In this document: positions 10,376-42,097 of the stretch, piece after piece
Layout: each line of letters begins with the position of its first letter
How positions within the stretch are numbered: the first letter of the stretch is position 1
NCBI GenBank assembly: GCA_047495785.1
Contig: JBLDXI010000021.1
Coordinates: 372,001-436,000 of the forward strand
Direction of reading: 5' to 3'
Source: Lepidodermella squamata
Lineage: Eukaryota; Animalia; Gastrotricha
Length of the DNA: 64,000 nt
The notes under the pieces: generated by a model
Seen by the model: the letters and a program-made list of their open reading frames with translations, nothing else
Database searches by the model: none
Told to the model about the DNA's origin: nothing
Translations under genes and position numbers: made by a program

Positions 10376-12007
10376 ATGTACAGTAAAGATTGGTCATCCG
10401 CGCCAGATGACGGTCGTCGTAGTCGTGAAATGAGTGCAAACTACGACAGGAGCATGTCTTTAACTAGGAGAATCGCCGCTGAAGCTCAAAATCGACCCTG
10501 GCACAAGATTTCAGCAGTACTCGGTCGGGTTGAAATTCCACTTTTCCTCTACTTTTTCGCCTCTGGAATATTTTCGGAAGCCCAACAGCGGATTATCGAT
10601 GGGAGAATTTGCTTGTATCAGTATAAATCGCCCTCGATATGCGAACACATCTCTGACGAACCGGCCTTAGCGCTGAACAAAGCTGCAGTCCAGCGAGATG
10701 TTCAAGAGTTCACGTTGTTAACCGGTCTGTTCTCGAACCTGCCAATGATAATTATCGCTGTAACTCACGGATCATGGTGCGATCGAATCGGTCACAAAGT
10801 TTCCCTCATTTTCCCTCATGCTGGGGATGCAGTGCTGGGATTCCTGTATCTTCTATTTCTAAAAGCCCCGGTTGATATCATTAATCCAGTGTATTTCGGT
10901 GTGACCTCGGTCATCTCAGGGCTAACTGGATCTTGGGCTGTAATAATGATGGCATGCTCGTCCCACGCGATGTTGTCGACACCTCATCCTAACCGGTTAT
11001 TCCGAATCGCCCTGATTTCCGCCTCTATCACCGCGGGACAAATCGCTGCGTATGCCATGAATTATTTAGTGCTTAGATACAACGCCTTTCCTTTCGCCTT
11101 CGTCCTCCAAATAGCCATCCATCTTTACGCGATTACTCATGTTGCCTGCCACGTTCAAGAGGTTCATTCCAAAGAAGAGGTTGACGCGAATAGGATCCGG
11201 TTGGCTGGTGGTTCGCATTTGAAGAACATTTGCATGCCGAAAGAAAACTTCCCCGCCGTTTTCAGCATATTTTTTGGCAAATCTGAAGATCCAAGGGAGA
11301 ACGAGGCAAAACGCTATAAGCGAATCATGTTGGTCACATTCGCGATATCGTCATGTCTCATTGGCTTCAAGTCCCTTCTAACCGTGATAGAAAATTTCAT
11401 GACCCTTCCGCCTATATCGATGCCACAGACGGAATATGTCCTCTTCATGGCAGCTTGTTCTTTGTCTCTGACCTTCGCTCTAGCTGTTTTAATCCATTTG
11501 TTCCACTCTTCTCTATTCAACAACTTCTTTCGATACACTGATGCTGGTATAGCGGTGATATCATTAACCACCCGAATGCTAGCAATGCTGACACTTGGGT
11601 TTGGCGATATCTTGCCGAATGTAGCTCCTTGGCTGTATTGTGCTCTCCATATGTTCAGCCTTTATCCATTGGCTGCGCTAGGAGCTGGAATGTCCAAATT
11701 GACGGAGGATAGTAAGCAGGGTCGTCTATTCGCAGTTCTATGCCAATTTGAGAATTTCTGTCAAACCGGTGCTGCATTCGGCTTCAACGCGCTTTTTGCG
11801 ATTTTCGCGAAGGAACATGTTGGTCCGTTGGACAGTAACACTACTCACTTCATCCACGGCTACATATTCATCTTTTCTGCTGGATTAACTCTTTTACCGC
11901 TTATGGCAGTCATTTGGCTTGGCAGAAAGCCGATCAACAACTGGAGTTTCCAGAAGAGCGTCCCCAGCGTTTACGGCTACATGGAAGAAGCACCCGAAAT
12001 TAACTAG
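10376..12007 (+). CDS. MFS transporter, SLC46 (PCFT-like) family, intronless
   Basis: 543 aa with about 12 hydrophobic segments, VEIPLFLY in TM1, a Cys pair in the first loop, GSWCDRIGHK (MFS motif A variant) and SKL...QGRLFA. Confidence 0.85.
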   Translation: MYSKDWSSAPDDGRRSREMSANYDRSMSLTRRIAAEAQNRPWHKISAVLGRVEIPLFLYFFASGIFSEAQQRIIDGRICLYQYKSPSICEHISDEPALALNKAAVQRDVQEFTLLTGLFSNLPMIIIAVTHGSWCDRIGHKVSLIFPHAGDAVLGFLYLLFLKAPVDIINPVYFGVTSVISGLTGSWAVIMMACSSHAMLSTPHPNRLFRIALISASITAGQIAAYAMNYLVLRYNAFPFAFVLQIAIHLYAITHVACHVQEVHSKEEVDANRIRLAGGSHLKNICMPKENFPAVFSIFFGKSEDPRENEAKRYKRIMLVTFAISSCLIGFKSLLTVIENFMTLPPISMPQTEYVLFMAACSLSLTFALAVLIHLFHSSLFNNFFRYTDAGIAVISLTTRMLAMLTLGFGDILPNVAPWLYCALHMFSLYPLAALGAGMSKLTEDSKQGRLFAVLCQFENFCQTGAAFGFNALFAIFAKEHVGPLDSNTTHFIHGYIFIFSAGLTLLPLMAVIWLGRKPINNWSFQKSVPSVYGYMEEAPEIN

Positions 12008-12182
12008 ATTTTTAGAATTGTAATCAATTTCAATAAACTATTTCTGCATTTACGATTAAAGCAAACTCTTGTCTTTTTGCTATGACGTCATACAACATTT
12101 TATCATTTGCCGGCGGGTTTTTATCTTTAACGGTTTCAAGGCCAACAATTATCCTGTCTAATAGTGGAGCTTTTACAGAATC

Positions 12183-13667
12183 ATGTCTAAAATCACTAGC
12201 ATCTTAAACGTGATCAAAAGTATGATATTGGGGCCAGAAGTGCCCCTGTTCATATTGTATCTATCGCAAGGAATCATCAATGCTGCCCAACAGCAGTTCG
12301 TTTATCAACGCATTTGCATGTACCACTATGATTCGCTGACACTTTGTAACCAAATCGACAAGTCGCCCGACTTAAAGCAGCAAGAAACTCAAGTTCAGGT
12401 GGATTATTCGCAATACTCAACTATACTACAGCTTACGTCGTATGCTCCTGTTATTTTTGTTGCACTGATCTACGGGGCTTGGGTAGATCGGATCGGTTAT
12501 CGAATCCCGTTGGTCTTGCCTCACATTGGTGGCATATTATGCACCTTGACTTTTCTGCTATCGTCACTCCTGCCGGCGAAAGCCTTTAATCCGATATACC
12601 TCGGAGCTTCCTATGTTTTCATTGGCCTAACTGGTCAAAGCTCTACAGGAAGTATGGCTGCTTTTGCTTACGTCACTCAGATAACTGACGGCAAAGACAA
12701 GCTGATTCGATTAGGAATTTTAGAGGCATGCATGACAATTGGTGATATGATTGGGTCTTTTCTCTCTGGCTTCGCGCTTCACGGTGGCAAAGACTACAAC
12801 CTGGCCTTTATACTTCAAATCGCTCTCAACTTTTACGCGGTATTCTACACATTCTTTGTTTTGACGGAGCTGAAGCCATTCAGTGCGGTGAGGGAGAGAG
12901 TGAAAATCGAGGCTAACGGATCTTGGGCGAGGTATCTATTGTCTCCGAAAGAAAACTTCATATCAGCGCTGAAAGTAATTTTCGGAAAATTTCCTCATCG
13001 AAATGGCGAGAAGCGGCGTTGGCTTCTAACGATGCTGCTAACTTACTTTTGGCTCGGTGCTGTTACAACAAGGCCAACTAATCAAATGCTTTTCGCTTTC
13101 CTGACTCTTCAGCCGATATCTCTCACACCATTTCTATACACCATGTTCCAAGCCGTTTACTTGACCGGTATTTCATCTGCGCTGTTTTTATTAATGCCAC
13201 TTCTTCGCATGAAGGCGGGTAATATCCTCCCGCTGACTGATGCGATGCTTGGATTCATTGGAGCTATTTCCAGATTTGTCGGCATGATCATCTTGGCTAT
13301 GGGGGGTCTCTTCCCGTCTGTCGCGCCATGGTTATCCAGCGTCATTTTAGCTCCAAGTATTTTTGCTTTCATTTCAATGCGATCTGGGCTAGCTTATGTC
13401 TCACAAGAAGACGAAAGAGGGCGCGTTTACGCAGCAAACACTCTTTTCGAATGCATATCAGTTCTTCTCGCAGGTCTCGGCTACAATGCTCTTTACGGCA
13501 TTACCGTCGCTCAAACCCTATCTTCCCCATTAAAAGCAGCCTTAGTCCATGGCTACCCTTTCTTAGTTGTCGCAGGTGTAGCTCTCATACCATTGATTAC
13601 TATATTATGGCTTGGTAAACAGCCCATTACCAATTGGGCTTTTGCAAGTTCCACGAGAAAAATGTAA
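12183..13667 (+). CDS. MFS transporter, SLC46 family, intronless
   Basis: 494 aa with GAWVDRIGYRIPL, AFAYVTQIT...RLGILEAC and ERGRVYA. Collinear paralog of both neighbours. Confidence 0.88.
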   Translation: MSKITSILNVIKSMILGPEVPLFILYLSQGIINAAQQQFVYQRICMYHYDSLTLCNQIDKSPDLKQQETQVQVDYSQYSTILQLTSYAPVIFVALIYGAWVDRIGYRIPLVLPHIGGILCTLTFLLSSLLPAKAFNPIYLGASYVFIGLTGQSSTGSMAAFAYVTQITDGKDKLIRLGILEACMTIGDMIGSFLSGFALHGGKDYNLAFILQIALNFYAVFYTFFVLTELKPFSAVRERVKIEANGSWARYLLSPKENFISALKVIFGKFPHRNGEKRRWLLTMLLTYFWLGAVTTRPTNQMLFAFLTLQPISLTPFLYTMFQAVYLTGISSALFLLMPLLRMKAGNILPLTDAMLGFIGAISRFVGMIILAMGGLFPSVAPWLSSVILAPSIFAFISMRSGLAYVSQEDERGRVYAANTLFECISVLLAGLGYNALYGITVAQTLSSPLKAALVHGYPFLVVAGVALIPLITILWLGKQPITNWAFASSTRKM

Positions 13668-13807
13668 CGTAAATAAAACAGCTTTTGTCTTGTATTCTCT
13701 TGTCACGTGAGCTGAAGTGAGATAAGATAGTGGGAAATTTCCCCGACATCAGATAAATATCTTGGACGTTGTACTAGCTTAGAGATAAACTACCAATAGC
13801 TGAGAAA

Positions 13808-15384
13808 ATGATCGAAGCTGCCTTCGAGATCGGCTCTGGCGAAATAACCCTTAGGCACGATGGTTTGGAGAAGGAGACAACCGTCCGAAATAAAGAAAGC
13901 AGAAACTTTCCCATGAAATTAGCTAGTAAAAGCTTTTGGTCACCATTTTTCTCCGGACCTGAAATTTCAGTAGCGTTGTACTTCATCTGCTACGGAATTT
14001 TCGTACCGGCACAACAACAATTCATTTACCATAGCATCTGCATGTATAACTTCGATTCGGAATCAGTATGCGACCAAATCGACAAATCGCCACAGCTTGA
14101 GGAACAAGAAGCCATTGTTCAAGTTCAATACTCCCAGTTCTCAACAATTTTTCAAGTCGCATCATACACTCCTGTAATTTTCGTAGTGTTGGTCTACGGC
14201 GCTTGGTGTGACAAATTCTCCTACCGGATACCGCTTGCCCTCCCTCACCTTGGCTGTGTGATAGTGACTTCACTTTATCTAATACTCTCGATTGGCCGAT
14301 TCGCATCGATGAATCCAGTCTATTTCGGTGCCTGTTCTTTCTTTCTCGGCGTGACCGGGCAGTCTGGGACTGTAACTATGGCGGCCTTCTCATATGGCAG
14401 TAGAGTTAGCGATGGGAAAAGTCGAATGGTGAGATTGGCGATTATTGAGGCCTGCACAACCCTAGGAGAAGCTTTTGGGTATCTTTTCACAGCCTTCATT
14501 TTTGATGGTGGCAAAGATTACTACAGCGCGTTTATGATTCAAATCGCTATAAATGCCTATTCTATCGTACTGATTTTCTCAACAGTCAAAGAAGTCGTTC
14601 CTTTCAGAGAGGTTAAAGCACGAGTGCAAGCAGAGACAAATGGCTCCTGGCTGAAATTTTTATTCTCGCCAAGAGAGATATTTTTGCCCGTGTTCAAGAT
14701 CATCTTCACAAGATCTACCAATAGAACGGCGGAACAGCGTCGCGAGCTGTTCATTTTCCTGCTAACGTATGCCATGTGCTCGTGCTTAGTTGGCTCCCGA
14801 CCGACGTCTCAAATATTGTTTGCCTATTTGTCGCTGAGACCCATATCAATATCTTCGTTTTTGTACACTATTCTCAACACGGTTTACGTATCACTGGCAA
14901 CATTCAGTCTATTTGTAATTTGTCCGATTTTGCGGATGAATTGCCCGCCACTTCGTCTGCCTTTTTCTGATGCGGCATTAGGAATCATTGGCATAATTTC
15001 CAAAATGGTAGCGTTCCTTTTGCTTGGATTAGGAGGATTTTACCCCGAACTCGCTCCTTATTTGTTTTATTGTACCGGTTGCTGTGCGTGTTCAGTTTCA
15101 TCTCAGTACGGTCGGGAATATCAAAAATAGCAAGCGGAGAGGAGGTCGGCCGGTTATTCGCCGCTAGTTCTGTCCTGGAAAATATTTCTGTTTTATTGGC
15201 TGGTCTTGCTTTTAACAGTCTTTACGGGGTTACAGTTGCGCAGCTTCCTTCATCGGAGATTGCAATAAATTTAGTGCATGGCTATCCTTTCCTCATTATC
15301 GCAGGATTGTGCATTGTGCCGCTAATACTATTCATCTGGTTAGGAAAGCAATCTATACCTAACTGGTCTTTTTCGAATTCATGA
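13808..15384 (+). CDS. MFS transporter, SLC46 family, with one 1-nt frameshift near 15077
   Basis: ORFs 13808-15130 and 15070-15384 join into a full-length paralog of 12183-13667 if one base is restored at ACC GG- TTG. Confidence 0.82.
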
Positions 15385-17963: not shown

Positions 17964-18196
17964 ACTTCTCAAATTTTCTCTTGATCAAAATAAATTGAAC
18001 ATAATTTAACTGTAAATTTCGTCTTATTTTGGAATTTGGATTACATTATTTCTACTCAACCCTGGTAGGTATATGAGACCGTCCGCAAAAAAATGGGGAA
18101 AATGTTTTATGGGTTGCCCGAACACAATACCTGTATATATGTTTGCTTTGCTTTTCATCCCTCTTCTTGCTCGCGGTCTCATATTTTTGAAATTTA

Positions 18197-18217
18197 GGGT
18201 TAGGGGTTAGGGTTGGG
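18197..18217 (+). repeat. Telomere-like (TTAGGG) tract able to form a G-quadruplex
   Basis: GGGTTAGGGGTTAGGGTTGGG has four G3+ runs with 2-3 nt loops, about 250 nt upstream of the eRF1 ATG. Confidence 0.7.
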
Positions 18218-18464: not shown

Positions 18465-20224
18465 ATGACCACAACCCACAGCCGAGCCGAGGCTGGCAGT
18501 ACCGAAGACACTATAGCGGTGTGGAGGACGAGGAAATTTATTAAAGAGCTGATTGGAGCGAAGGGGTAAAATTCGGTTTTTAAATCTCAAATTCCCTTGA
18601 ACCTCTAGCTTTATACGTAGAAATGGCACAGGCATGATCTCGTTAATTATCCCGGCAAACGGCCAAATCGCTCGGATAAGCAAAATGCTGGTCGGTGAAG
18701 TCGGAGCTGCTGCGAACATAAAATCGACCGCCAACAGGCAGGCCGTTCAACGGGCATTGAAATCTGTTCAAGAGCGGCTGAAATTGTATCATTCTCGTGA
18801 GCTTAAAATCCGCCCTAATATAGTGGAATTTCAATGTTTTCAATTATTTAGTGCCACCAAACGGGCTGGCTATTTTTTGTGGAACCGTGCTGATGGATGA
18901 TGGCAAAGAAAGGAAGTTGTGCATCGACTTTGAACCTTACCGCCCGGCTGGGCGAGCTGTCTATCTATGCGATAGCAAGTTTCACTGTGACGAGTTGCAG
19001 GCTCAGCTTGAAGAGAATCGCAAATACGGCTTCATAGTTGTCGACGGCAACGGAGCGCTCTACGCTACGTTGGCAGGAAATTCGCGCCAAATCTTACACG
19101 TTTTTGGCGTTGATTTGCAAAATAAGCAGGGCCGGGGCGGTCAGTCGCAACAACGATTTGACCGGAATCGATTAATTCAGCGGCATAATTACCTGCGAAA
19201 GGTTGCTGAGATCGCTACGAAGTTGTTCATAGTTCAGGATAAGGTGAACGTTGAAGGCTTCATAATTGCTGGATCAGCTGCTATCAAGGATGAATTGGTT
19301 CAATCCGATCTATTCGACAAGGTCAGAATTTAAAAAACTTATTTGAAAAATAATCAACTTTTTACAAAATAGCGATTAGCTGCGAAAGTAATTAAGGTGG
19401 TCGACGTAGCTTATGGCGGAAATCGCGGGCTCAATCAGGCTATCGATTTAGCCGCGGATGCTATATTAAACGTCAAATATTTCCACGATAAAGCCGTAAT
19501 AAGTATGCGAATTAAAATCTAATAATGCCTGAAATCTACTTTCAATATTTTTTCAGCGAATTTTTTCGACGAAATCGGCGCCAATTCGGACAAAGTTATT
19601 TTTGGCGTGGACGAGACAATGCATTGCCTAGAAACAGGCGGCGCTGTCTTGACATTGATTGTATGGGAAAACCTGGACGTGGTCAGGTACACTGTTCGTC
19701 GCAAGGTGCCCACAGATGACGACGCTGTTGAGGACGCTGTAAAAACGGTCTATGTGCGACCTGAGCAAATTAAGCGCGGCAACTCTTGACTGACTAAGGC
19801 TCTCGGCATCTCTGACGGAAGATCTCAGGATGCCGAAATCGTTGACAGCCAGCCCCTCATTGACTGGATCGTCGAGAACCATTCAAAATTCGGTAAGAAA
19901 AGACTCTGAATTGCGGAACTATTACCAATTGATAACGATTCAAATTGTATAGGCTGCAAGCTAGAACTCGTGAGCGACACTACGCCAGAAGGAAATCAAT
20001 TTTGCAAGGGGTTCGGCGGCTTAGGGGGTATACTTTGTTGCTTTTCGGATCCTAATTGAGGGTAACTATTGTTGCGACATTTTACAGGAATGCTGCGCTA
20101 CAAAGTTGACATGGCAGCTTTTTCAAGTCCATTGGCTGATCCGGAAACTGGCGCGGGGGCGAGTGGCACGGTCGATGAAGCTGAGGATCCGGCTGATCTT
20201 TTTGATCTCGCCGACTACATATAA
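18465..20224 (+). CDS. ETF1: Eukaryotic peptide chain release factor 1 (eRF1), divergent, with an in-frame TGA at codon 370
   Basis: Exons 18465-18565, 18621-18796, 18852-19321, 19373-19502, 19557-19892, 19953-20027 and 20088-20224. All introns are GT-AG, 51-60 nt and phase-compatible; 474 codons plus TAA. Motifs [48 protein letters not shown] and acidic tail FDLADYI. Confidence 0.96.
19787..19836 (+). promoter_or_regulatory. Candidate stop-codon readthrough cassette: UGA-C plus 3' stem-loop
   Basis: TCT TGA CTG ACT. Hairpin: TCGGCATC (19803-19810) pairs with GATGCCGA (19829-19836) and CTGA (19812-19815) with TCAG (19825-19828), with one bulged T and a 9-nt loop. Confidence 0.6.
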
Positions 20225-20412
20225 AAATTGGAAGGATAATGATGTTCACAGATTACTACGTATAAGCACTAAGGATCCGTTTCAATTGTTCACATCCCCC
20301 ATAAATGACTCTGTATACTAAGTTTAAATCGCAAACTTACAAATCCATAGCTTGCAATTATATTCAAATATAAAAGATTGGCATGTAATGTTCCTTATAA
20401 TCTTTATTAAAT

Positions 20413-21168
20413 TCAAGCGCGATTACGAGCGGGAAATGGGTCATCGCCATCATTGGTATGGATTTTCGAAGTTTCGGCTTCGTATCTCACCCGCCTTACA
20501 AATCGTCGACGCTGCCGTTGTCCACCGCATAAGAACTTAGTAACCACATAATAAATCAACAACAGCAAAATAGCCGCGGAGAAGCCGTAGAAAACGGAGA
20601 CACTTATGACCCATACTTTACAGCCGTGATAAGTCCAATCGAATTTTACGTTTTGATCGATATTAGCTTCAACAACATTGTAACGCCGGTAAATCACGCC
20701 GAATTTGTTGTAGACGACGCAGAGCAAGTTAGATCCGGGTTGAACTTCGGAAGGGAGTGGCCATGAGAAAATGCCGTCAACATTTTCTAGTTTGAACAGA
20801 GCTGTCTCCTTGCCTGGGCCGTAGTTATCGATCATAGCATACCATTTGATCAAGGCTTGGCCAATTTTGACAGAACAGTCTAGGTCTGGACAGGTGCTGG
20901 GATTGTGACCGCAAGAGCGAATCCCAAGCTCGAATTGATTGGGTTCTAAGCGAAATATTGGGGTTGTTAATTTCACTCCGCTGCCGTCCGAGAGTCGAAC
21001 TAGCTTTTCAACGCTGCTTGCCAATTCCTTAAAGTCAGCTGCGACAAGACCGGGCGCAATCGTGTCGTTGTAGTAGAGTAGGTCTGTGGCGTTCTCAGAT
21101 GCGTTAATAATGGAGGAAACCATCATCAACACCGTAATCGGAAATAAAATTGAAACTCTTGAAATCAT
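20413..21168 (-). CDS. Type I membrane protein with a single Ig-like domain
   Basis: Signal peptide, PIF...LDCS...IKWY...LLCVVYNKFG (Ig C...W...C-x-V-x-N-x-x-G pattern), TM segment and Arg-rich stop-transfer sequence. Confidence 0.75.
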   Translation of the reverse strand: MISRVSILFPITVLMMVSSIINASENATDLLYYNDTIAPGLVAADFKELASSVEKLVRLSDGSGVKLTTPIFRLEPNQFELGIRSCGHNPSTCPDLDCSVKIGQALIKWYAMIDNYGPGKETALFKLENVDGIFSWPLPSEVQPGSNLLCVVYNKFGVIYRRYNVVEANIDQNVKFDWTYHGCKVWVISVSVFYGFSAAILLLLIYYVVTKFLCGGQRQRRRFVRRVRYEAETSKIHTNDGDDPFPARNRA

Positions 21169-21260
21169 CAGTGATTATGCGAAATCTAAAATATTTGCAA
21201 AGCATTAATTACACTTTATTGAAATGACTCATCATTAGAAAGTATTTTCGCTTCCGGGTA

Positions 21261-21479
21261 TTAGGTTTTAGGATTTTGACCTCTCATTTGGACATTATGC
21301 TCAGGTCCTGCAAGTTGTGAGAAAGTGATGTTCGACATTGGCCTCGATGCGAGGATGCAGTTTCTAGACAGGTGGATGTAGTCGGTCCAAAAGGCAACAG
21401 CTATGATTATTGCAGCAAACAGGAAGCCAACCAGGTATGACACAGGTAAGATCCACGCAAATTCGTGCACGCATGTCAT
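21261..21479 (-). CDS. Putative single-TM microprotein
   Basis: 72-aa ATG ORF. Its TM WILPVSYLVGFLFAAIII resembles WVISVSVFYGFSAAILL of the adjacent gene. Confidence 0.4.
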   Translation of the reverse strand: MTCVHEFAWILPVSYLVGFLFAAIIIAVAFWTDYIHLSRNCILASRPMSNITFSQLAGPEHNVQMRGQNPKT

Positions 21480-22314: not shown

Positions 22315-24113
22315 ATGCTTAACAAGATGCTCATCTTACCAACGATACTCAGCGTTTTGCTTTTGATGACGGCTTGCGATGGCAGTGAACCTTGGAGTGA
22401 GAATCCGGACGATGACAGCCGTGAATGGGAGACCCCAGCCGTTGAAGACCCTTTTGAGGAAGAGAATGTGGTGCAGGTCGAGGAAGCTTCTGTGGATGTC
22501 CCAAATGGTCACTACTACGCAACATCAGACTTCCAGCCGAAGGATCATGCCTCATTCCACGATATTGCCGATATCTTTCACCTAAATACGAGCGAAATCG
22601 ATACTAGCTGGCTACTCTTTGGATCTGCAAAAATCAATGAAGTTAAAGAGCTTGAATTGAACTCACGTCTGGAACGGGAAAACTTGACGGGTTTCATGGC
22701 GAGTAAAAAAGTATAAAATGTCAATTTACTTAATTATCTGAGCGAATTTTTCTTTTTTTTCACAGCCTCTGCCCTTGTCGATTTCCAACGATTCTCAGCA
22801 CATCGGATGGAGAATAGATGCTACGTTTGAATTGGAGATACTTAAGCTTAACAAGTCTTCTGTCGTCGATGGAGGATCGCATGTTGTTATGTATCTCGCC
22901 AAAGCAAGCCACGTTAATCTTCTGAACAGTATGCATTTGCTTTTAAATGATCGTTTTGAACTTGAATTGATCCTGCAGAACTAGAAAGCTTCAGTTTTCA
23001 ATCAGTGCTCAACCTTGTAATGTTTCCTGAAAACAATGCGATCTCAGAGGGGGTCATCGCTGCGTTCACCAGGACGACCGATCATGATACGGTTATTTTC
23101 ACTTTACCTTTCCCTTCAGCATCTCGAAGTGGTATATTTTTTAGGTAACTGGTAGTATGATGGGAGGAGAGTATGCGAATGCCATAAATATTTGCTCTCC
23201 TGTTACATCCCACCCCCCTAACAACGAATCAATCACAATATCAATCATGGGCCACGGCACTGTTTTGGAGGTACAACCAAAGTTTCAACTCCAACCAAAT
23301 CTCTATTACAACATTTTAGAGCCGAATCGAATGGTGGCATTCCGACCGCTCAATTTGTAGGTTCAGTCAAAAGTACTCCGAAGCCGCTGCTAAACGACTG
23401 ATAGGCAACGATGCGTTGCACTTGATAGTGATGGCACCGCCTTTTACTGCGAAACATGATCCCGAGGACAAACCTGCAGTATTTTCACCTGTGAAAGTAA
23501 AAAGCATCGGATTTGCCCCCATCTTCACGGGTAAAAACCACATTTTCACTTTATTTTCTTTTAATAATGTTAATCTTGCTACATAGTTTCCGTCAACAAT
23601 AAACCGTCAAGCCCTAAATTCGCCAGTAATCCAGGATTGCATTGGATTGAATTGCAAAGCTGTAATCAGCCTTCATTACTTGATTGCTCAACAGAATTCT
23701 CCCACTCAACGCCAATGACGTTGTGGTTCCGGAAATCAAACCACCAGCATAATGTATCACGAATTTTAGGAGCTGATGGTTTGCAAGTTATTGATCTCAA
23801 CGCCGTTGAAAATTGTCAACCTGGCGATAGCTACGTTTGCCTAGTCAGAAATCATTACGGTATAGCTAAACGTCAGTTCGTCATCAAAACCGAAACTCAG
23901 TCAGACGAAAGCTTCTTGAATAATCTACCTGGCCAGAGAGCCTTCTTCTTTTTTATCGGAGCCCTGGTCATGGCGTTAGTTCTAGCAATAATTCACTTCT
24001 CCAAGGTTGTTTTAGCGCGAAGGAAGGAAAAACTCAAATCTCAATCTGGTGCTAATCTTAGCAATCAATCAACACCAAGTTACGAGCTCCTTCGAAAGAC
24101 TGAATCTATTTAA
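22315..24113 (+). CDS. Type I membrane protein: L-type-lectin-like domain + Ig-like domain + TM, multi-exon
   Basis: Signal peptide, SWLLFGSAKI...GFMASKK|PLP...GWRIDATF, then LDCSTEF...LWFRK...YVCLVRNHYG, TM (FFFFIGALVMALVLAIIHF) and tail SYELL. Short GT-AG introns keep the frame. Confidence 0.75.
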
Positions 24114-24344: not shown

Positions 24345-27220
24345 ATGAAATTACAGCGTTGGGTTCTGTTGGCCCCACTTTTCGTCTGCCTAGCTGCAAC
24401 AAGCGAATACGAGGACTACGCGGCAAATCGCGAGGTCGATTCGGAAGATTACGTTGAGGATGTAATTCCGTTCATAGAACGGAATTATGCTGAGGTTGAA
24501 ACGATTGACAGGCGTGCGATACCTGGTACGCTTCATTCTGATTTTCAGTCTGGACGTAAGTTGTAACTACGTCATTTGTTAAGTCAACATCGATGTTGAT
24601 TCACAGAGAAAAGCAAATGGCGGGCTTCCGAGGGGGTTAAGTGGGATTGGAACGGCGTATACTTGATACCAGATGAAAGCAGCAAAGCGAGATACGTAAT
24701 ATCGCAAAATCCACTCCCCGAACATTTTCTCAAGGGTTCCAAGTCCAGCTGGAGAATCGGTGTTGAATACTCCTTGAAGCTTGACGAAAACGACGATGGT
24801 CTGACAGATTTTTCGAACCCGGCGCAAGACGCAGCTGTCATTCTCATTTCAAAGTCCGGATTCGACCAATTGCAATCTGACGACTTTCGCCTTGATAAAA
24901 TGGTTGCTGGTTCAGGATTCGCAGTTCCGATTCAAGCCAGGCGTACAGTGACTTTCAGCAACGAAACCTTTCTAACAGTCAAGGGCCAGTCAAGCTTTGA
25001 TATTTCAGCTTTATTCGCGGATCACCTTCCTGGCTCATGTGTTGTGCCTTTCGCTAGAAAGGGCACTGCCAAGGCACACCTTTCTTCACACCTCGTCATT
25101 CATCGCACTTACGGCTCTAATTATATATATGTAAGTCTGGCAAACTACCGATTTAGAGTTTTTGTCAGTGATTACTTATGAATTCTTTGTAGATTGAAGT
25201 ACCTGAAGGAAAGTGTCTTCTGGAGTTCAGGCCAGGCATGCTTTGGGCTAAGGAATACTACCTTGCTATCATGGCATGGGGGCGCTTTTCAATCGACCAC
25301 TTTAGCATACAATCTATCAGAGTAATTTCCAGTGAAAAGGATCCTTCCGCTGAAGATAAAGGTTAGCAAACCTTTTCACTGTTCAAGATTGCAAAATTAC
25401 TGTTTGTTACAGAGGAGAAGAAGAAAGATGACGACACTATTGTCGCCTTAAACAATCCTACTTTTACATTGGAAGACATGATGGGGACTCTTTTCGATAA
25501 TAACAATGTGAAATCAACAACGGAAAGTCCAGATTACATGAACTCAGAAGAGCCGGAGCAAGGCTTCGCAACGCAAAATGTTAAAGAATCGACCGATTAC
25601 TATCATTATTTATTCGATAGCTTCCATCTTACGTTCCCATTGAAAGGTAAACTTCAGCGATTACAAAAATCCAATGCATAGCTCTTGCACAACATTCAAG
25701 AATCAAACTGGTTAGTTTACGGAGCGGCCATTGCTTCTGATGAAAATCGTATGGTTATGATGAACCCATTTGCTGAAAATGACAATCGATCTGGTATAAT
25801 TATGGCACGAGAAGTACGTATTTACATATTCATCATTTATTATATGGCTTCATTTTTTTATTTTGCTAGCCTGTACCAACAGTCGATCCGTGGAGGCTGG
25901 ACGCTAAGTTTCACGTTGGCCACCGCAGGCGTAACGAATCATTTTACGATTCACGCGACCACGGGTTCTTCACCCTAGCCTTCATAACAGATCGGGTCGC
26001 TCAGACTATAAAAGGTAATAGAACTCCCATGCCATGTATAACCATTACCAGTTATCGTCGATCGTCTCACTTTAGATAATGGGGATGCGACAACTGTTGG
26101 AACTGCATTGTCACGCAAAGGTGAATACGCAAAAGAGGCTATGTTTTCCGTGGGAGTCTTTCTATCGATAGGCGATGATGAGGTCTGTTTATCTTGTGCA
26201 TGCATTCTAGCTTGTGTATCATTTCGTCTATATGCTTAGATCAGAAGCTACTTGGTACCGTCTTCATCAGAACCGGTAGATACCATCGTCGAAGTTTGCA
26301 GATCACCGCTGTCAGACATTGATTGGAGCGGCGACGTTGATCCTAAAGATGCTTTTGTAAATGAGACGTACACGATTTCTATCATTAAAAAAGATACGAA
26401 CGAGATGGACGTTAGGATGGAGTGGTGGCAAGGCGTTGAGAACGGCAGAAATGCAAAGCCTTCTAAAGTTGTCTGTACAAAAGAATTCGAAATTGAGGCA
26501 GCACAATGGCCCTTCCAATTCAACGACTCGATATATCTGATAGCATACGCCGATAACAAGCAGCAAAGCACTACCGCATCGAAGTTTCACAACGTTGATG
26601 TCGACTTGGTTGCGCTAACGATTTCACCTCTAATTTCGGGTAACAGCAATATTTTGATTTAGTTTGTCAATTAAAATGAGATTATATGCCTAGTTGATAT
26701 CAGAACAATTCCATCAGCTCCAATTTTCGTTAACGACGACAAAATACGCGATATTTACGTGCCAATTTGCAACGAAGCGTCGACGATTCACTGTCTCCTG
26801 GATTGCTCAACCATCATGGCGAATCCAAGGCCGTACACCTTTTGGCTGAAGAAACCGGTTGACGTCTCAGGAAAGCTGTTACAGATTACAGGAGCAGAGG
26901 GACACTCTGTTCTACAGCTGAACAAGCTCGACAACATCAGAATCGGCGACGCGATTGCTTGCATTGTCCAGAATGATTACGGTGTCTCGCGTCGCACTTT
27001 TTACGTCACTGACGACCACGACTTGCTGGGCGCGAACGCCCGTAATACTGATCGTTCGTCGGCAGGCATCAAAGCTCTCCTCTTCTTTTCCGGGATTTTC
27101 ACTGTTGCAATAATTTTCAGCATTGCTCTAGCTGCCAAAGTAGTCAGAAATAGGATAGTTAGACAACGGACGATTGCCGATACTTATTCTTTATTGCAAA
27201 GGGCTGATCAAGGCCTGTGA
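24345..27220 (+). CDS. Type I membrane protein: two lectin-like units + Ig-like domain + TM, multi-exon
   Basis: Signal peptide MKLQRWVLLAPLFVCLAA. Unit 1 KWRASEG...ISQNPLP...SWRIGVEY; unit 2 FPLK|ESNWLVYGAA...GIIMARE|PVP...WRLDAKF. Ig LDCSTIMANPRP...WLKK...IACIVQNDYG, TM and tail DTYSLL. Confidence 0.75.
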
Positions 27221-27284: not shown

Positions 27285-28688
27285 TTAGTGGAAACAATTA
27301 AATTTGCATGGAACACATGAGAAGTTCGCGATAGGTGTCTCTGGGTTATCATGGATCCATTTCTTGAAAACCAGACCAGCTGATTGTTGGTACCAAGTTT
27401 TGTTGAAGCCGTAGCGATTATTAGGGTACTCATGCACCAAGTAAGTCCTGTTGAACAGTAGCTCATGAAAGCAATGTACTGCTAACGCGTCCGAACGGAT
27501 CATCAATTTATTTACAAAGAGCTCAGGCCGTTTGCCAAGCCGCTTTAGGTCTCCGAGCCCGAAGACACACACGCCATGGCGCCACTGTCCTTTGCAAGTC
27601 GCATTGTCATAATCTTCCCATTCAGAAAATCTCGTCACCCAATCTTTACGACCAACAGATACACATCGCCCAGGGTAACCACCTGGAACATGGACATTTT
27701 CGATGTTGTGATTCATAGTTGCCCAGTAAGCTTCGTCCATCAAAACCGAATTGTCGATATACCGGACCAAGTCAGCAGCAATTTCACTCGAAATTAAGTA
27801 CTCGGCGAACGAACGGCTGAGGGAGGTGCTGACAGATCCTTTGTAAATCTTTAATGCCCGGGCAGGATTAGGCATTGTTGTCTGCTGCAGCTCTTTGTCG
27901 TAATCGAATTCCAAGGGTAGACCATTTTCTTCATATGTTACAGATATCCGCTTGTTTAGCAACGTTTCGTCTATTTCGAGCAGTTCTACGTCGTTGGTTT
28001 CATTGAGAATTTTCGCAATTTGAACCAATTCTCTGTTTGTTCTCAACGGAAAATCTTGGCCCTGAAGAGTGAAAACATATTTCCATGGATGACCGCTTTT
28101 GAGTAGGGCTTTCAAACAGCTGCGATATGCTCGAATCATGTTCAACCCCAGTGATGAAACTGAGTACTGCTCTTCGGCTACTATGACGTTTGGGAAGCAT
28201 CTGGCGAATCGCCGAAGACCGCTTTCAAACAACTGCGGTGATTTCAAGTCGATATGGAGGCAGTACAAGTTTTGTGGGGCATAGATCGCGCTGAGAAGTA
28301 GCTCGACTTGCAGTAAATCTTCGTTAACAGGAACGGCGTAGGCTAACGGAAATGCAGCCTCCTCGACACTGCCCGGTTCATCCGGATAGAAGAATCGCTC
28401 TTTAATGGTCTCGCAGGAGGCAAAAGCTTTCCAAGTTGAGAACTCTTTCTCCAATTTCATCGGTTTTAAAGCCTGTCCGATCGCTGCTGCGTCTCCTTCC
28501 ATTATCGCAGGGCAGTCATAGCTGTGCCGCCTTTTGTAGAACACCTCTGTAGTTGGCCTTGAGCCGTCTTCCGTGTCTAACTTCAGGTGGCGATTTGGAG
28601 TGGTGGCGATTAATGCGTAGGTTACAACAGCCGCGAAAAGAAATCCCACACAGCCGTTGCGAGTTCTCTTGCCGAAAATTCGCGTCAT
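27285..28688 (-). CDS. Core-2/I-branching beta-1,6-GlcNAc transferase (GT14, GCNT-like)
   Basis: Type II anchor, EEAAFPLAY, IYAPQNLYCLHIDLKS, WKYVFTLQGQDFPLRTN, KGS, DEAYWAT, RHGVCVFG and LFVNK. Start set at MTRIFGKR by comparison with the paralog. Confidence 0.93.
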   Translation of the reverse strand: MTRIFGKRTRNGCVGFLFAAVVTYALIATTPNRHLKLDTEDGSRPTTEVFYKRRHSYDCPAIMEGDAAAIGQALKPMKLEKEFSTWKAFASCETIKERFFYPDEPGSVEEAAFPLAYAVPVNEDLLQVELLLSAIYAPQNLYCLHIDLKSPQLFESGLRRFARCFPNVIVAEEQYSVSSLGLNMIRAYRSCLKALLKSGHPWKYVFTLQGQDFPLRTNRELVQIAKILNETNDVELLEIDETLLNKRISVTYEENGLPLEFDYDKELQQTTMPNPARALKIYKGSVSTSLSRSFAEYLISSEIAADLVRYIDNSVLMDEAYWATMNHNIENVHVPGGYPGRCVSVGRKDWVTRFSEWEDYDNATCKGQWRHGVCVFGLGDLKRLGKRPELFVNKLMIRSDALAVHCFHELLFNRTYLVHEYPNNRYGFNKTWYQQSAGLVFKKWIHDNPETPIANFSCVPCKFNCFH

Positions 28689-29015: not shown

Positions 29016-30443
29016 TCAATGTAAGCAATTGAATGTGCACGGAACACAAGTAAAATTTGAAGTAGGCGTTTTGGGATTCTCGCGATACCATTTTTGGAAC
29101 AATACACTGGCAGACTGCTCGTACCAAGTTTGGTTGAAACCGTACTGCTTCGGTGGGTATAAATTTTCATAATAAGTCCTATTGAAATGGAGCTCGTGCA
29201 GGCAATGAGCAGCTATCGCCTCGGAACGCACTGAAAGCTTGTTTGCAAAAAGTTCCGGCCGTTTAGTCAGCCGTTTGAGATCAGCCATTCCAAACATGCA
29301 GACGCCATGCCGCCATACACCTCGGCAGGTTGAATTCGGGTAATCAGCCCATTGAGTATATCTAGTTAACCAGTCCTTTCTGCCGACAGAAACACATCGG
29401 CCAGGATAACCACCTGGCGGTGACAGCTCTTCGAAATTGTGGTTCAGAGTTGCCCAATACACCTCGTCCGTTCGAAGAGTATGGTCAAGATAATTAACCA
29501 ATTTTCTAGAGACTTCACCACTCAGCGTGAATTCAGCAAATTTGCGGCTTAATGCCGCACTGACGGAGCCTTTGTAGTAGGTTATTCCTTTGATAGGAGC
29601 CGGAGTCGAGGCTTTCAACTCTTTGTTGCCATCGACATCCTTAGGCACGCCATCCGCTTCATATTTTACCTGAAACCTCTTCTTCAAGCGATTTTCGTTC
29701 AGGTGAAGCAATTCGACGTCGTTAGACCCATTGAGGATTCTGGCTATTCGAACCAACTCTTTGTTAGTTCGAAGAGGGAAGTCTTGGCCTTGTAATGTGA
29801 ACACATACTTCCAAGAGTGGCCGCTTTGGGTTAATGCTGAGATGCAGCTACGATACGCCCGGATCATGTTCATTCCAACGGAAGATACAGAGTACTGTTC
29901 ATCTGTGACGATGATGTTTGGGAAGCATTTAGCAAATCTTCGAACTCCTCGCTCGAACAGCTGGGTAGCTTTAAGATCAATATGAAGGCAGTAGAGATTC
30001 TGCGGAGCGTAAATTGAGCTCAGCAGTAGTTCGGTTTGCAGCAAATCTTGATATACTAGAATATTGAATGCTAATGGGAAGCTCGCTTCTTCCTGGCTAG
30101 CTGGTTCAGTGGCGTAGTAAAATCGCTGATTAATCGCTTCGCACGACGAAAAATTCTGCCAAACTGCGTATTCAGTTTCAAGGGTGATTCCCGCTTTCGA
30201 AGCGGCTAGAATAGACGGCATACGGCCCTGAAGGATAGGTTCGCAGTCATGTGGATGCCGCTTTCTGTAAAACGGAGCCGCATTGTTAACATGCCCAACT
30301 TCCCTGCTGTCGCTAAGCTCACGTTTCGGCCGTTGATAAGGCGTTGATGCGATGAGGGCATACGTTACCACAACAGCCAAAACAAAGGCGATGGCACAGT
30401 TCCACAGGCGTTTGCCTAGGCTGATGAAACGAACCCTAGCCAT
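29016..30443 (-). CDS. Core-2/I-branching beta-1,6-GlcNAc transferase (GT14, GCNT-like), tandem paralog
   Basis: 475 aa, intronless, same motifs (EEASFPLAF, IYAPQNLYCLHID, WKYVFTLQGQDFPLRTN, DEVYWATL, LFANK). Ends in TGA where the paralog has TAA. Confidence 0.93.
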   Translation of the reverse strand: MARVRFISLGKRLWNCAIAFVLAVVVTYALIASTPYQRPKRELSDSREVGHVNNAAPFYRKRHPHDCEPILQGRMPSILAASKAGITLETEYAVWQNFSSCEAINQRFYYATEPASQEEASFPLAFNILVYQDLLQTELLLSSIYAPQNLYCLHIDLKATQLFERGVRRFAKCFPNIIVTDEQYSVSSVGMNMIRAYRSCISALTQSGHSWKYVFTLQGQDFPLRTNKELVRIARILNGSNDVELLHLNENRLKKRFQVKYEADGVPKDVDGNKELKASTPAPIKGITYYKGSVSAALSRKFAEFTLSGEVSRKLVNYLDHTLRTDEVYWATLNHNFEELSPPGGYPGRCVSVGRKDWLTRYTQWADYPNSTCRGVWRHGVCMFGMADLKRLTKRPELFANKLSVRSEAIAAHCLHELHFNRTYYENLYPPKQYGFNQTWYEQSASVLFQKWYRENPKTPTSNFTCVPCTFNCLH

Positions 30444-39352: not shown

Positions 39353-40698
39353 TTACGGAACACCCGCGAGTCCTCCGCCCGCCATCCCCCACTCAGGATT
39401 CGTATTAGCCAAACGCCGCATGCGCCTATAAAAAATTTAAATTAATAAAAAATCCTTCTCAACATTTTTTTCGCAAAATTCTCACCTTGTAATACGATCT
39501 TGATCTTTGAGTTTTTTCGCCATTTCTGCGTCGCTTAAAACATCGACAGTAGGCCCCCATTGGTCGGCTTCATTCTGAGCCCTAAGCGGGACTTCAACCG
39601 GGGGTAGCATTTGAGATTCGCCCGAAAACGCGTAGACACCCTGGTACCAGGCCAATTGACCGCGGATCGAATACGCGATAGTCGATACAAATTCACCGCC
39701 CAGCCCTAACTCAGCGCACAGCTTCTGCGCGAACTGCTCCGGATTATTTTCCGGGTTTGACATGTCCCATTCGAACTGATCGACTAGACACAAATTTCCG
39801 ACATGTATATTCAGCTTAATTACAACTCGACTGTCTGACTGCTCTGTTATGAATGATGAATCAGCCGACGTAAAGCCGTCTAGTTGTTGACGTATGCGTT
39901 GAGCAATAGCTGCGGAAATCATTCAATTAGTTTAATGTGGTCACATTGTTTAATTAAATTACGTTGAGCAAATGTTGTTGGGTTCAGGTCGAGATCTTCG
40001 CATAAAATTTCGGCGAAAGCTTCCGGCGTGATCAGCTGTTCGTTTTTATTCCAAACGAAGCAGTCGCGCAATTTCGCGCCCTCTAGTTCTAGGTCAAGGC
40101 GGATAGGCACCAATACCTCGGCCTGGTTAGCGTTTTCTGTCAGCTTAAACGGGTCCAGATCGTCGAAGCACATCGGGAAAGACGTGGCTTTAGTGCGCAT
40201 AGGCATGAACCGGTTGTGATTGACCGGGGTGCAGCACGGAATGGCTTCGAGGTGGATTGAAGTCGAAGGCATTCCTGACACCCACGGCGACGCCCCGGCA
40301 GCAGCGGCGGCCGCGGCGCCTCGTTTCGTCGTAGTTTTCACGCTATCATTGCGCGACATAGCAGGCGTAGGCGCCGTAGTTGGACCTGCGGGGCCTGTTG
40401 GGACTTTGAAATTTGCGTCAGTGCCGTCCATAATTCCAGCAATTATCGCATCGACCTCAGCGGCTTTTAGCAACATGCAATTCTGGGTGATGGCGCCAAA
40501 CGGCACCACGCCCTGGTCTACCAGTAGCTTCCTTTCGTCGTAAGTGATTTGCCGCTTCCATAGCTGCGGGTACTTTCGGTAGATAGTGCCGCGAAATAGT
40601 CGCAGGTAAGCGCCGACTTCAGACCCGATGTAGTACTGCTCGCCTTCGAGTTCGATTTTTTTGGGCTTTTCGCCAAAAGTGGCCGTGCCAACGTCCAT
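39353..40698 (-). CDS. SMARCB1: SWI/SNF subunit SNF5/SMARCB1
   Basis: Exons 40698-39963, 39909-39486 and 39425-39353. Motifs [63 protein letters not shown] and [15 protein letters not shown]. Confidence 0.97.
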
Positions 40699-42097
40699 TA
40701 ATCACTTTTGTTTATGTTATTCGGCGTAATTACAATTCAAAAATGACCACCTACGTGATAGAAATTGCACAGATTAATTTTTTAAATTACCTATTCACAC
40801 TTGAGTGGACAGTGACACGGTGTCTCATTCGTTCTAGTAACGCACAACGCGCGGCGGCCATCATAAACGTGGGCAGCGCGATTAGCGACTGAAAAAAAAT
40901 CACTCAAATAATGACGCGCGTAGTAAAATCGATAGGTAATCCTGTAATTCGCGGGTGACAATCTCATTGGCCGATTAAGCGATGGGCGAGATAACGTAGG
41001 ATGCTTACAAACGCCTTCTCTAATCTAAGCTAAAACCTTTTAAGCATCATAAAAATGTTTATCGCTAGATTTTAATCTTGCTCAAACACGCTTACCGGAT
41101 ATTTGGGCATTCAAGGTTATAGTCGCGCTAATTTTAGCGAGAGGCAACGATTTTTTCAAGATTAGCAATTTTTTTGAACAAACTCTTCCTGTATCTTATC
41201 AACTCGCAAAATGAGTCAGTTTTTACCCTCTAAGTGGAATTTCACACACAGCTAGCTAACAATTCTACATTTTTATGGTTATGGATTGCCTAATTGGCCC
41301 AATCATTTGAATTATGCGCGCGTGTTTTCTCCATATGAATTCCTCTCTAATTACTAGCGGAGTTTCTCCGCGTTGAATTGGGCATTCGTCCACGCGAGTC
41401 ATCAAAGTTCGAAGTCAGACAGATCTCATTTCATCGCCAAAGCCAAGTTCTTGTTACTCGATTGTCTAACTGTCTTTCGAAAAACAGGTACGACAAATTA
41501 ATTCCCACTATGTCAGTGTGAACCTAATTCGATTTACAAAATCAGGGCGCGAATCGCCCTGAAATTCGCAAAACATGTCCAGATGACAATTATGTCAATA
41601 ATCAATTTTCTGGATACAATTTTTGTCGTGACAGCTGTGCCCGATTTATTTCCCGTCTCGAAGCTGTCACGGTTCTCTTTATTTGCATTCCGATTTTTTC
41701 GTTAATTCGAATTTCCCCCTCTTACTTAACTTGATCCGACGAAACCTACTCGATGTAAAAAAAAGCTCCTACTTCCGGTCCAGGATAGAATTATTGCATG
41801 CGGCTACTTAGTCGGATATTGCAACGGCTAACCTGGTCCTATCGTAGGTGTTTAATATTTTATGAATAGCTCATTAATATCCAGTCTATAACTTGTTAAC
41901 ACTCATCCTGGCAAAAAACGCTAGGTCGCTCTTTACTACAAATTTTTAATGAATATATAACAGGCTAGAACAAAATGATAGACCCCATCTGCATTACTTA
42001 AAAACTTATCACCCCTGGAGGTGACCTAAGTGTATGATAGATCTTTAACTAAGTTGCGCGTTTTTATTTTATAGAAGCTTTAAGATAAAATAACTGT

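What the first reader, a model, noticed from the sequence alone, without database searches (positions are those of the whole stretch)
18465..20224. eRF1 gene with a single in-frame UGA: candidate release factor controlled by readthrough of its own stop codon
Seen: the seven exons splice to a complete 474-codon eRF1 with no frameshift, but codon 370 is TGA (19787-19789; ...[18 protein letters not shown]...). The frame continues for 104 conserved codons ([15 protein letters not shown]...[21 protein letters not shown]...FDLADYI) across two more correctly phased introns. The stop lies in the variable C-domain minidomain, where almost any inserted residue should be tolerated, and its +4 base is C. 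Established: UGA-C is the leakiest eukaryotic stop context and the eRF1 C-terminus binds eRF3. Bacterial prfB (RF2) autoregulates through an internal UGA-C, giant-virus eRF1 genes need recoding, and plant/fungal eRF1 autoregulates through readthrough/NMD at the terminal stop. Inference: full-length protein is made only when termination is weak, so the gene senses termination capacity. I do not know of an internal-stop version in an animal nuclear eRF1.
Basis: partly seen in the sequence, partly recalled or inferred. Interest (0 to 1): 0.95.

Follow-up and report, generated by a model that had tools for sequence, protein, structure and literature searches.

The report
Diverged animal eRF1 with internal UGA
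An animal genome carries an intact but extremely diverged copy of the translation-termination factor eRF1 whose reading frame holds one UGA stop, followed by an unusually stable RNA hairpin. The gene may need readthrough of that stop to make full-length protein, but a very recent nonsense mutation or a base error cannot be excluded from this window alone.

Summary
Seven GT-AG exons (18465-20224, +) splice to 474 codons plus TAA, with one in-frame TGA at codon 370 (19787-19789, next base C). Both sides are homologous to eRF1.

This is not an ordinary eRF1. It is about 52% identical to animal eRF1s, which are 70-89% identical to each other. It sits on a branch about 15 times the median and has lost 38 of 162 near-invariant residues, mostly in the stop-codon-reading N domain (GTS to GTG, TASNIKS to AAANIKS, S70A). 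Neighbouring genes are normally conserved, so it is probably a specialised paralogue.

The 104 codons after the TGA are the best-kept part (14 of 15 invariants). A disabling stop would therefore have to be very young. TGA is not a general sense codon in this genome, and no SECIS was found.

New here is a 13-bp hairpin (19803-19836, -18 kcal/mol) that starts 13 nt after the stop. It is the most stable local fold in the gene (p about 0.002-0.003).

I put programmed UGA-C readthrough at about 0.45, a young nonsense allele or base error at about 0.33, and an in-frame spliced "exitron" at about 0.12. No relatives were found, so conservation of the stop is untested.

The parts
18465..18565 (+). exon 1 (ATG at 18465)
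   Evidence: splice model
18621..18796 (+). exon 2: N domain. It carries GTG in place of the GTS loop (18625-18633), AAANIKS (18706-18726), and Ala at the position of human Ser70 (18742-18744).
18852..19321 (+). exon 3: end of the N domain with YLCDSKF (18962-18982), and the M domain with GGQ (19136-19144)
19373..19502 (+). exon 4: end of the M domain and start of the C domain
19557..19892 (+). exon 5: C domain including the minidomain; holds the in-frame TGA
19787..19789 (+). in-frame TGA, codon 370, next base C; column of human Phe357
19803..19836 (+). RNA hairpin: 8 + 4 + 1 Watson-Crick pairs with one bulge, about -18 kcal/mol. It begins at +17 from the U of UGA (13-nt spacer). It is encoded largely by an insertion specific to this gene (ISDGRS, 19808-19825).
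19739..19828 (+). Candidate in-frame exitrons sharing the donor GTAAAA at 19739. The acceptors are AAG at 19798 (60 nt) or CAG at 19828 (90 nt; this one lies inside the 3' arm of the hairpin). Either would remove the TGA.
   Evidence: composition is exon-like, and nothing shows that either is used
19953..20027 (+). exon 6: C-domain core (FCKGFGG at 20000-20020)
20088..20224 (+). exon 7: C-terminal tail with the conserved FDLxDY-type end (20201-20221) and the true stop TAA followed by A (20222-20224)

Best explanation
The locus is a real, structurally intact gene for a highly diverged animal eRF1. It is most likely a second, specialised copy beside a canonical eRF1 elsewhere in the genome. Full-length protein needs decoding of the UGA at codon 370.

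The most likely route is programmed readthrough. The stop is the weak terminator UGA-C and a stable hairpin follows it. A near-cognate tRNA (Trp, Cys or Arg) would insert a residue at a tolerant, normally aromatic position at the tip of the minidomain. Translation would then continue through the conserved C-domain core and the eRF3-binding tail to a strong UAA-A stop.

Termination at the UGA would give a 369-residue product without the C-domain core. It would also leave two exon junctions downstream, which could mark the mRNA for nonsense-mediated decay. Output would then rise when UGA termination is weak.

Shown: the gene model, the stop, its context, the hairpin, conservation on both sides, and the divergence. 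Inferred: readthrough itself, NMD coupling, the regulatory logic, and the existence of a canonical copy.
For: - One stop only in 474 codons, with six intact short introns.
- The part after the stop keeps 14 of 15 columns that are at least 95% conserved in 114 canonical eRF1s. That is the highest share of any part of the protein. It includes the FxKGFGG core and the FDLxDY end.
- eRF3-interface residues F291, I294, F303, F406, R192 and R203 are kept (mapped; residue list from PMC2909394).
- In a neutral simulation the downstream 104 codons plus splice sites stay intact with P=0.12 at 0.05 substitutions per site and P=0.015 at 0.1. The stop is therefore either tolerated or very young.
- The context is UGA-C. 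The same tetranucleotide is the readthrough stop in the Mimivirus/Megavirus RF gene, and there too the true stop is UAA-A or UAA-U.
- The hairpin 19803-19836 is the most stable 35-nt fold in the CDS. Only two equally stable ones occur in 13.6 kb of other coding ORFs, about a 0.3% chance of one starting within 20 nt of a given codon. Only 0.22% of synonymous recodings of the same peptide fold as well, and 0.06% of shuffles.
- The stop replaces Phe357, and F357A human eRF1 is active.
- The first downstream exon junction is 103 nt after the stop.
Against: - No orthologue or close paralogue was found in any collection. Conservation of the UGA and of the hairpin is therefore untested.
- There are no transcript, read or ribosome data.
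- The hairpin starts at +17, while characterised readthrough stimulators start near +12.
- All 13 pairs are Watson-Crick, which would also fit a recent palindromic insertion.
- The window holds another broken gene, an MFS copy with a 1-nt frameshift. So lesions or assembly errors do occur here.
- Internal readthrough that is essential for a protein's fold is rare in animals.
Confidence: 0.45

Rival explanations
1. A very recent nonsense mutation, either segregating or just fixed (the start of pseudogenisation), or a single-base assembly error, in an otherwise functional diverged eRF1 paralogue. There is no recoding, and the hairpin is coincidental.
For: - A single lesion is what a young loss-of-function allele looks like. 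The simulation allows it if the stop is younger than about 0.05-0.1 neutral substitutions per site.
- TGA is one step from Leu TTA, Cys, Trp, Ser, Arg or Gly codons, and Leu occurs in this column in 3 of 114 sequences.
- A fast-evolving duplicate may be dispensable.
- Another gene in the window carries a frameshift.
- No comparative support for recoding could be obtained.
Against: - The gene kept an open frame and splice sites along a branch of about 2.2 substitutions per site. Catching it just after death is a priori unlikely.
- The stop is the leakiest tetranucleotide, lies at a tolerant residue, and is followed by the most stable hairpin of the gene. That is three coincidences.
- The context is not a homopolymer, so the typical long-read error type does not apply.
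Confidence: 0.33
2. The TGA is removed from the mature mRNA by splicing of an in-frame exonic intron (exitron). The candidates are 19739-19798 (60 nt) and 19739-19828 (90 nt). The product would lack part of the variable minidomain. The hairpin, which contains the 19828 acceptor, could control this choice.
For: - The donor GTAAAA at 19739 equals the donor of intron 1. The 60-nt length matches the gene's introns (51-60 nt). Both candidates keep the frame.
- Only 3.3% of coding positions in the window are spanned by an in-frame GTAA..NAG pair of 45-65 nt, and 1.3% by GTAA..YAG of 45-95 nt.
- Many diverged eRF1s lack this minidomain segment.
- CTGAC, a branch-site-like motif, directly follows the TGA.
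Against: - The segment is exon-like: 50-53% A+T against 63-82% in the six real introns. There is no T-rich tract before either acceptor, and one acceptor is the disfavoured AAG.
- The segment still encodes the conserved YxxPEQ motif in frame.
- Splicing would not explain why only one stop is present.
Confidence: 0.12
3. UGA is a sense or ambiguous codon throughout this genome (a variant nuclear code). That would fit the Ala70 and altered decoding motifs of this eRF1 if it were the only copy.
For: - S70A lowers UGA decoding in human eRF1, and Ala70 underlies the UAR-only specificity of Euplotes eRF1 (PMC3025575).
- Ser occupies this position in 183 of 194 homologues.
- The GTS and TASNIKS motifs are also altered.
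Against: - About 3,500 codons of homology-supported coding sequence in the window hold no in-frame TGA: two Branch genes, SNF5, YJU2, a HAT-repeat protein and MFS genes.
- The two Branch paralogues and a database homologue end at the same residue, one with TAA and one with TGA.
- A scan for other TGAs flanked by coding-like sequence gave no convincing case.
- Ala70 also occurs in chytrid fungi.
- No suppressor tRNA is present in the window.
Confidence: 0.02
4. The UGA encodes selenocysteine, or the UGA is edited to UGG by A-to-I editing.
For: UGA is the Sec codon. Editing of stop codons to Trp codons is known in other systems (general knowledge).
Against: - No SECIS or any Rfam family scored at E<=10 in 19700-21300 or at gathering score in the whole window.
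- The 3' UTR has at most about 190 nt before the convergent neighbour.
- The position is a variable surface loop, not a redox site.
- The edited A would follow G, the least favoured ADAR neighbour (general knowledge), and it is not inside the stable helix.
Confidence: 0.03
5. An old, decaying pseudogene.
For: The sequence is highly diverged, and 23% of near-invariant residues are lost.
Against: - There is one stop, no frameshift and six intact introns. GGQ, NIKS, YxCxxxF and the eRF3-interface residues are kept.
- Neutral decay to this divergence would give many stops and indels.
Confidence: 0.02

Closest known systems
Mimivirus R726 / Megavirus mg280 class-I release factor (PMC3521657)
   Same: It is an eRF1-family gene whose full-length product needs readthrough of an internal UGA-C, and whose true stop is a strong UAA-A/U. 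An autoregulatory logic has been proposed for it.
   Different: The viral gene also needs a frameshift, has no introns, and its stops lie early in the gene. This one is an intron-bearing animal nuclear gene of metazoan descent. It has a single stop late in the C domain followed by a hairpin. No viral relative was found.
Plant eRF1-1 readthrough/NMD autoregulatory circuit (PMC5397192)
   Same: A leaky stop is followed by downstream intron(s), so termination invites NMD and readthrough protects the mRNA. The system senses eRF1 activity.
   Different: In plants the leaky stop is the normal terminal stop and the read-through part is 3' UTR. Here the stop is internal, and the read-through part is an essential, conserved quarter of the protein.
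Bacterial prfB (RF2) +1 frameshift autoregulation
   Same: An internal UGA-C in a release-factor gene, with synthesis inversely coupled to termination efficiency.
   Different: prfB uses a +1 frameshift on CUU UGA C with a Shine-Dalgarno stimulator. Here the downstream frame is frame 0, and the +1 frame hits TGA after one codon. Only readthrough fits.
Animal and viral programmed readthrough with a 3' stem-loop (Drosophila kelch and hdc, alphaviruses, coltivirus; review PMC13517186)
   Same: UGA-C context plus a stable downstream structure and a conserved in-frame downstream ORF.
   Different: Characterised stimulators begin near +12 (8-nt spacer); this one begins at +17. No conservation or assay data exist.
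Variant-code ciliate eRF1s (Euplotes, Blepharisma; PMC3025575) and the diverged second eRF1 of Tetrahymena (PMC2613156)
   Same: Ala at position 70 and altered N-domain motifs. A long-branch second eRF1 copy is known in ciliates.
   Different: The host is an animal that uses TGA as a stop. Ala70 alone is not diagnostic, since chytrids also have it.

Membership tests
eRF1 (eukaryotic class-I release factor) | Three-domain architecture eRF1_1 / eRF1_2 / eRF1_3 | tested here: met
   Pfam hits on exons 2-6 in the right order. PDB eRF1 aligns at E=8e-60.
eRF1 (eukaryotic class-I release factor) | Catalytic GGQ, plus the NIKS and YxCxxxF stop-codon-reading motifs | tested here: met
   GGQ at 19136-19144, NIKS at 18715-18726, YLCDSKF at 18962-18982.
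eRF1 (eukaryotic class-I release factor) | Near-invariant second-shell decoding residues (GTS loop, TAS before NIKS, R65, V66, S70) | tested here: not met
   They read GTG, AAA, T, A and A. The N domain keeps only 52 of 75 near-invariant columns, whereas other long-branch animal eRF1s keep 98% overall.
eRF1 (eukaryotic class-I release factor) | Orthologue-level similarity to other animal eRF1s (70-89% to Lingula) | tested here: not met
   53% identical to Lingula, less than Naegleria at 62.5%. Terminal branch 2.17 against a median of 0.13, though inside the holozoan clade at 97/97 support.
Programmed stop-codon readthrough gene | Weak stop context | tested here: met
   UGA followed by C. The true stop is UAA-A.
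Programmed stop-codon readthrough gene | Protein-coding constraint continues in frame after the stop | tested here: met
   14 of 15 near-invariant eRF1 columns are kept downstream, and two introns are in phase. This rests on homology to distant eRF1s, not on orthologues.
Programmed stop-codon readthrough gene | Stimulatory RNA structure about 8 nt after the stop | tested here: inconclusive
   A strong hairpin is present, but the spacer is 13 nt, not 8.
Programmed stop-codon readthrough gene | Stop codon conserved in related species; readthrough measured | not testable with these tools
   No relatives found. No expression data.
Autoregulated release-factor gene | The internal stop is read by the gene's own product | tested here: inconclusive
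   Ala70 and Arg73 predict weakened UGA reading. The single S70A effect is small when eRF3 is present, and chytrids also have Ala70.
Autoregulated release-factor gene | NMD-competent layout: an exon junction more than 50 nt after the stop | tested here: met
   Junctions lie 103 nt and 178 exonic nt after the TGA. Whether NMD acts on this mRNA was not tested.
Selenoprotein gene | SECIS element in the 3' UTR | tested here: not met
   No Rfam hit at E<=10 in 19700-21300.
Variant nuclear genetic code (UGA as sense) | In-frame TGA in many conserved genes; TGA not used as a terminator | tested here: not met
   None in about 3,500 homology-supported codons. Branch paralogue 2 ends with TGA at the homologous C-terminus.
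Pseudogene | Several disabling lesions, lost splice sites, neutral substitution pattern | tested here: not met
   One stop only, all splice sites intact, functional motifs kept. A pseudogene only just born cannot be excluded.

The most novel reading that the evidence does not exclude
An animal keeps a second, radically remodelled class-I release factor whose stop-codon-reading surface has changed (possibly UAR-biased). Its synthesis requires hairpin-assisted readthrough of an internal UGA-C. The canonical eRF1's efficiency at UGA would then set the level of the paralogue, through truncation and NMD. This would be a cross-regulated, two-factor termination system not described in any animal.
Probability: 0.3. 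Interest if true: 0.85.

Novelty: new variant of a known kind. Interest (0 to 1): 0.62.

Why it matters
Release-factor genes that gauge termination through their own recoding site are known in bacteria, giant viruses and plants, but not in animals. If the UGA is truly read through, this would be the first animal case. The read-through part would also be an essential piece of the protein rather than an extension.

Apart from the stop, an animal eRF1 copy this diverged is itself unreported in the literature I could search. It is more distant from animal eRF1 than an amoeboflagellate's is, with its changes concentrated in the decoding domain. It would be a natural experiment on stop-codon specificity.

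If instead the stop is a young lesion or a base error, the finding reduces to a fast-evolving duplicate on its way out.

Tried and rejected
- Close relatives. I searched 1.84 billion cluster representatives with exon 3 and the 5.8-billion-protein collection with exon 3. I also searched it with a profile of full length that carried the window's exons. Two metagenome scans and one viral scan followed. Nothing was closer than about 52-61% identical, so no dN/dS or stop-conservation test was possible.
- Synteny through the neighbouring Branch gene. The nearest homologue's contig (L001, 45% identical) has no eRF1 and no shared neighbours. The NCBI contig gave no DNA.
- A first fragment alignment (A1) was misaligned by MAFFT and dropped.
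- Genome-wide UGA reassignment was rejected.
- Selenocysteine was rejected.
- Frameshifting was rejected: the downstream homology is in frame 0, and the +1 frame stops at once.
- A lower extension of the hairpin towards +10 (I2) alternates pairs and mismatches and is not predicted to form.
- A simple codon-usage score had too little power to rank in-frame TGAs.
- Organism identity is unresolved. The best named hits of a neighbouring gene are nematodes. An AU test marginally rejects grouping this eRF1 with two nematode eRF1s (p=0.034). The assembly accession of the nearest NCBI hit is not mentioned in the searched literature.
- Structure prediction was not run, because the spliced protein has no reference form.

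Full report
**1. Observation**

- Seven exons: 18465-18565, 18621-18796, 18852-19321, 19373-19502, 19557-19892, 19953-20027 and 20088-20224.
- Six GT..AG introns of 51-60 nt, 63-82% A+T.
- 474 codons plus TAA, and one internal stop: TGA at codon 370 (19787-19789), followed by C.
- Pfam eRF1_1, eRF1_2 and eRF1_3 match the exon translations in order, on both sides of the stop.
- Human eRF1 structures align to exon 3 at E about 8e-60.
- The piece before the stop aligns to human 290-350, and the piece after it to human 363-385.

This places the stop at human Phe357. In an alignment with 114 canonical eRF1s that column is Phe in 102. Phe357 lies at the tip of the flexible minidomain (residues 329-372), and F357A human eRF1 remains active (PMC2909394).

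**2. What kind of eRF1 this is**

The gene keeps GGQ, NIKS and YxCxxxF but is far more diverged than any other animal eRF1.
- No protein more than about 61% identical to exon 3 exists among 1.84 billion cluster representatives or among fragment-sized proteins of the 5.8-billion collection.
- A profile search able to return full-length proteins gave only canonical eRF1s at 49-54% identity.
- It is 53% identical to Lingula eRF1. For comparison, Enterobius is 82%, a plant 72% and Naegleria 62.5%.
- A maximum-likelihood tree puts it inside the holozoan/metazoan clade (97/97 support), on a terminal branch of 2.17 against a median of 0.13.
- Of 162 columns at least 95% conserved in canonical eRF1s it keeps 124. 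Other long-branch animals (Meloidogyne, Henneguya) keep 98%.

Retention of those near-invariant columns, by region:

| Region | Columns kept |
|---|---|
| N domain | 69% |
| M domain | 81% |
| C domain before the stop | 78% |
| C domain after the stop | 93% |

The losses cluster in the decoding surface: GTS to GTG, TASNIKS to AAANIKS, R65T, V66A, S70A, G73R, Q80E, and the five residues before YxC.

Ser70 is present in 183 of 194 homologues. S70A lowers UGA decoding by human eRF1, and Ala70 accounts for the UAR-only specificity of Euplotes eRF1 (PMC3025575). However, Ala70 also occurs in chytrid eRF1s, so it is a lead and not a proof.

Two other genes in the window, SNF5/SMARCB1 and YJU2, are conserved against human at ordinary invertebrate levels. 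The divergence is therefore specific to this gene. It points to a specialised paralogue with a canonical copy elsewhere. That is an inference, because the rest of the genome is not available.

**3. Not a code change, not Sec, not an old pseudogene**

- Long homology-supported ORFs hold no in-frame TGA. These are two Branch genes, three MFS genes, SNF5, YJU2 and a HAT-repeat protein, about 3,500 codons in all.
- The two tandem Branch paralogues and a database homologue end at the same residue, one with TAA and the other with TGA. TGA therefore terminates in this genome.
- No tRNA and no Rfam family, SECIS included, was found.
- Neutral decay to this divergence would have produced many stops and indels. 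In simulation the 104 downstream codons plus four splice dinucleotides stay intact with probability 0.12 at 0.05 substitutions per site and 0.015 at 0.1.

If the stop is disabling, it is very young. Otherwise it is tolerated.

**4. New evidence bearing on mechanism**

(a) A hairpin lies at 19803-19836. It has 13 Watson-Crick pairs and one bulge, about -18 kcal/mol, and begins 13 nt after the stop.
- It is the most stable 35-nt fold in the whole CDS.
- Only two hairpins as stable occur in 13.6 kb of other coding ORFs, both in a GC-rich Ala tract of SNF5. The chance of one starting within 20 nt of a given codon is about 0.3%.
- Only 0.22% of synonymous recodings of the same 12 residues fold as well.
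- It is encoded mostly by a six-residue insertion that other eRF1s lack.
- Caveats: characterised readthrough stimulators begin near +12 and this one begins at +17 (PMC13517186). An all-Watson-Crick helix could also be a recent palindromic insertion.

(b) The stop contexts parallel the giant-virus class-I RF gene. Here the internal stop is UGA-C and the true stop is UAA-A. There the internal readthrough stop is UGA-C and the true stop is UAA-U or UAA-A (PMC3521657).

(c) Two introns follow the stop, the first junction 103 nt away. Termination at the UGA could therefore trigger NMD, as in the plant eRF1-1 readthrough/NMD circuit (PMC5397192).

(d) The eRF3-interface residues are kept except Y301V, and one of them (F406) lies after the stop. 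The acidic FDLxDY end is also kept. The downstream quarter of the protein is thus functionally needed.

**5. Rivals**

*Young nonsense allele or base error.* This needs no special mechanism. The window does contain another broken gene: the third MFS copy has a 1-nt frameshift near 15065-15087. Against this rival, three things would have to coincide: the leakiest tetranucleotide, a tolerant residue, and the gene's strongest hairpin just downstream.

*In-frame exitron.* The donor GTAAAA at 19739 is identical to the donor of intron 1. It pairs in frame with AAG at 19798 (60 nt, the size of the gene's introns) or with CAG at 19828 (90 nt, inside the hairpin's 3' arm). Such pairs cover only 3.3% and 1.3% of coding positions. 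However, the segment is exon-like in composition, lacks a T-rich acceptor tract, and still encodes the conserved YxxPEQ motif.

*A-to-I editing.* This is unlikely, because the A follows G and is not in the stable helix.

**6. Verdict**

Recoding by readthrough is the single most likely reading, at about 0.45. The gene is a remodelled paralogue rather than "the" release factor, so any feedback is probably exerted by the canonical factor.

I found no report of an internal stop in an animal eRF1, or of such a diverged animal eRF1. The decisive tests are listed under next steps: raw reads, a whole-genome search for the canonical copy, orthologues, cDNA, footprints and reporters. None of them is possible with this window alone.

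Noticed in passing
window 18194-18212: A short interstitial telomere-like repeat (TTAGGG / TTAGGGG, about 3 units) lies about 250 nt upstream of the eRF1 start codon.
   Followed up: partly
window 10376-15381 (+): Three tandem MFS_1 transporter paralogues, 31-48% identical. The third copy switches frame near 15065-15087: 23 nt where its paralogue has 8 codons. It is either a pseudogene or a 1-nt assembly indel next to T runs.
   Followed up: partly
window 27288-28688 (-) and 29019-30443 (-): Tandem, single-exon core-2/I-branching enzyme paralogues, 59% identical. They end at the same residue with TAA and TGA respectively. The best named homologues are nematode proteins (Soboliphyme, Steinernema).
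   Followed up: yes
window 19787-19797: The string TGACTGACTAA puts a stop in all three forward frames within 11 nt at the site of the in-frame TGA. It also contains CTGAC, a branch-site-like motif.
   Followed up: partly
window 39922-40701 (-): SNF5/SMARCB1 orthologue exon. Its Ala-rich, GC-rich insert holds the only two coding hairpins in the window that are as stable as the one after the eRF1 stop.
   Followed up: no
window 23574-24110 (+) and 26675-27217 (+): Two paralogous ORFs, 28% identical, each with a C-terminal membrane anchor and no Pfam match. They flank an ORF at 24600-25178.
   Followed up: no
window 45125-45302: A tandem repeat array with nested periods of 22, 33 and 55 nt (unit like ATCTACATGACA...), in an intergenic stretch.
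   Followed up: no
P0073 and P0101 (database proteins): eRF1s of two chytrid fungi (Obelidium mucronatum, Boothiomyces sp.) carry Ala at the Ser70 position that is linked to loss of UGA reading in Euplotes. The Boothiomyces entry is a 680-residue protein named as an electron-transfer flavoprotein.
   Followed up: no
window 47307-49118 (+) and 63155-64000 (+): A HAT-repeat RNA-processing protein (PRP39/SART3-like, with an RRM-like end) and the splicing factor YJU2. Both are normally conserved and both lie in long single exons.
   Followed up: no
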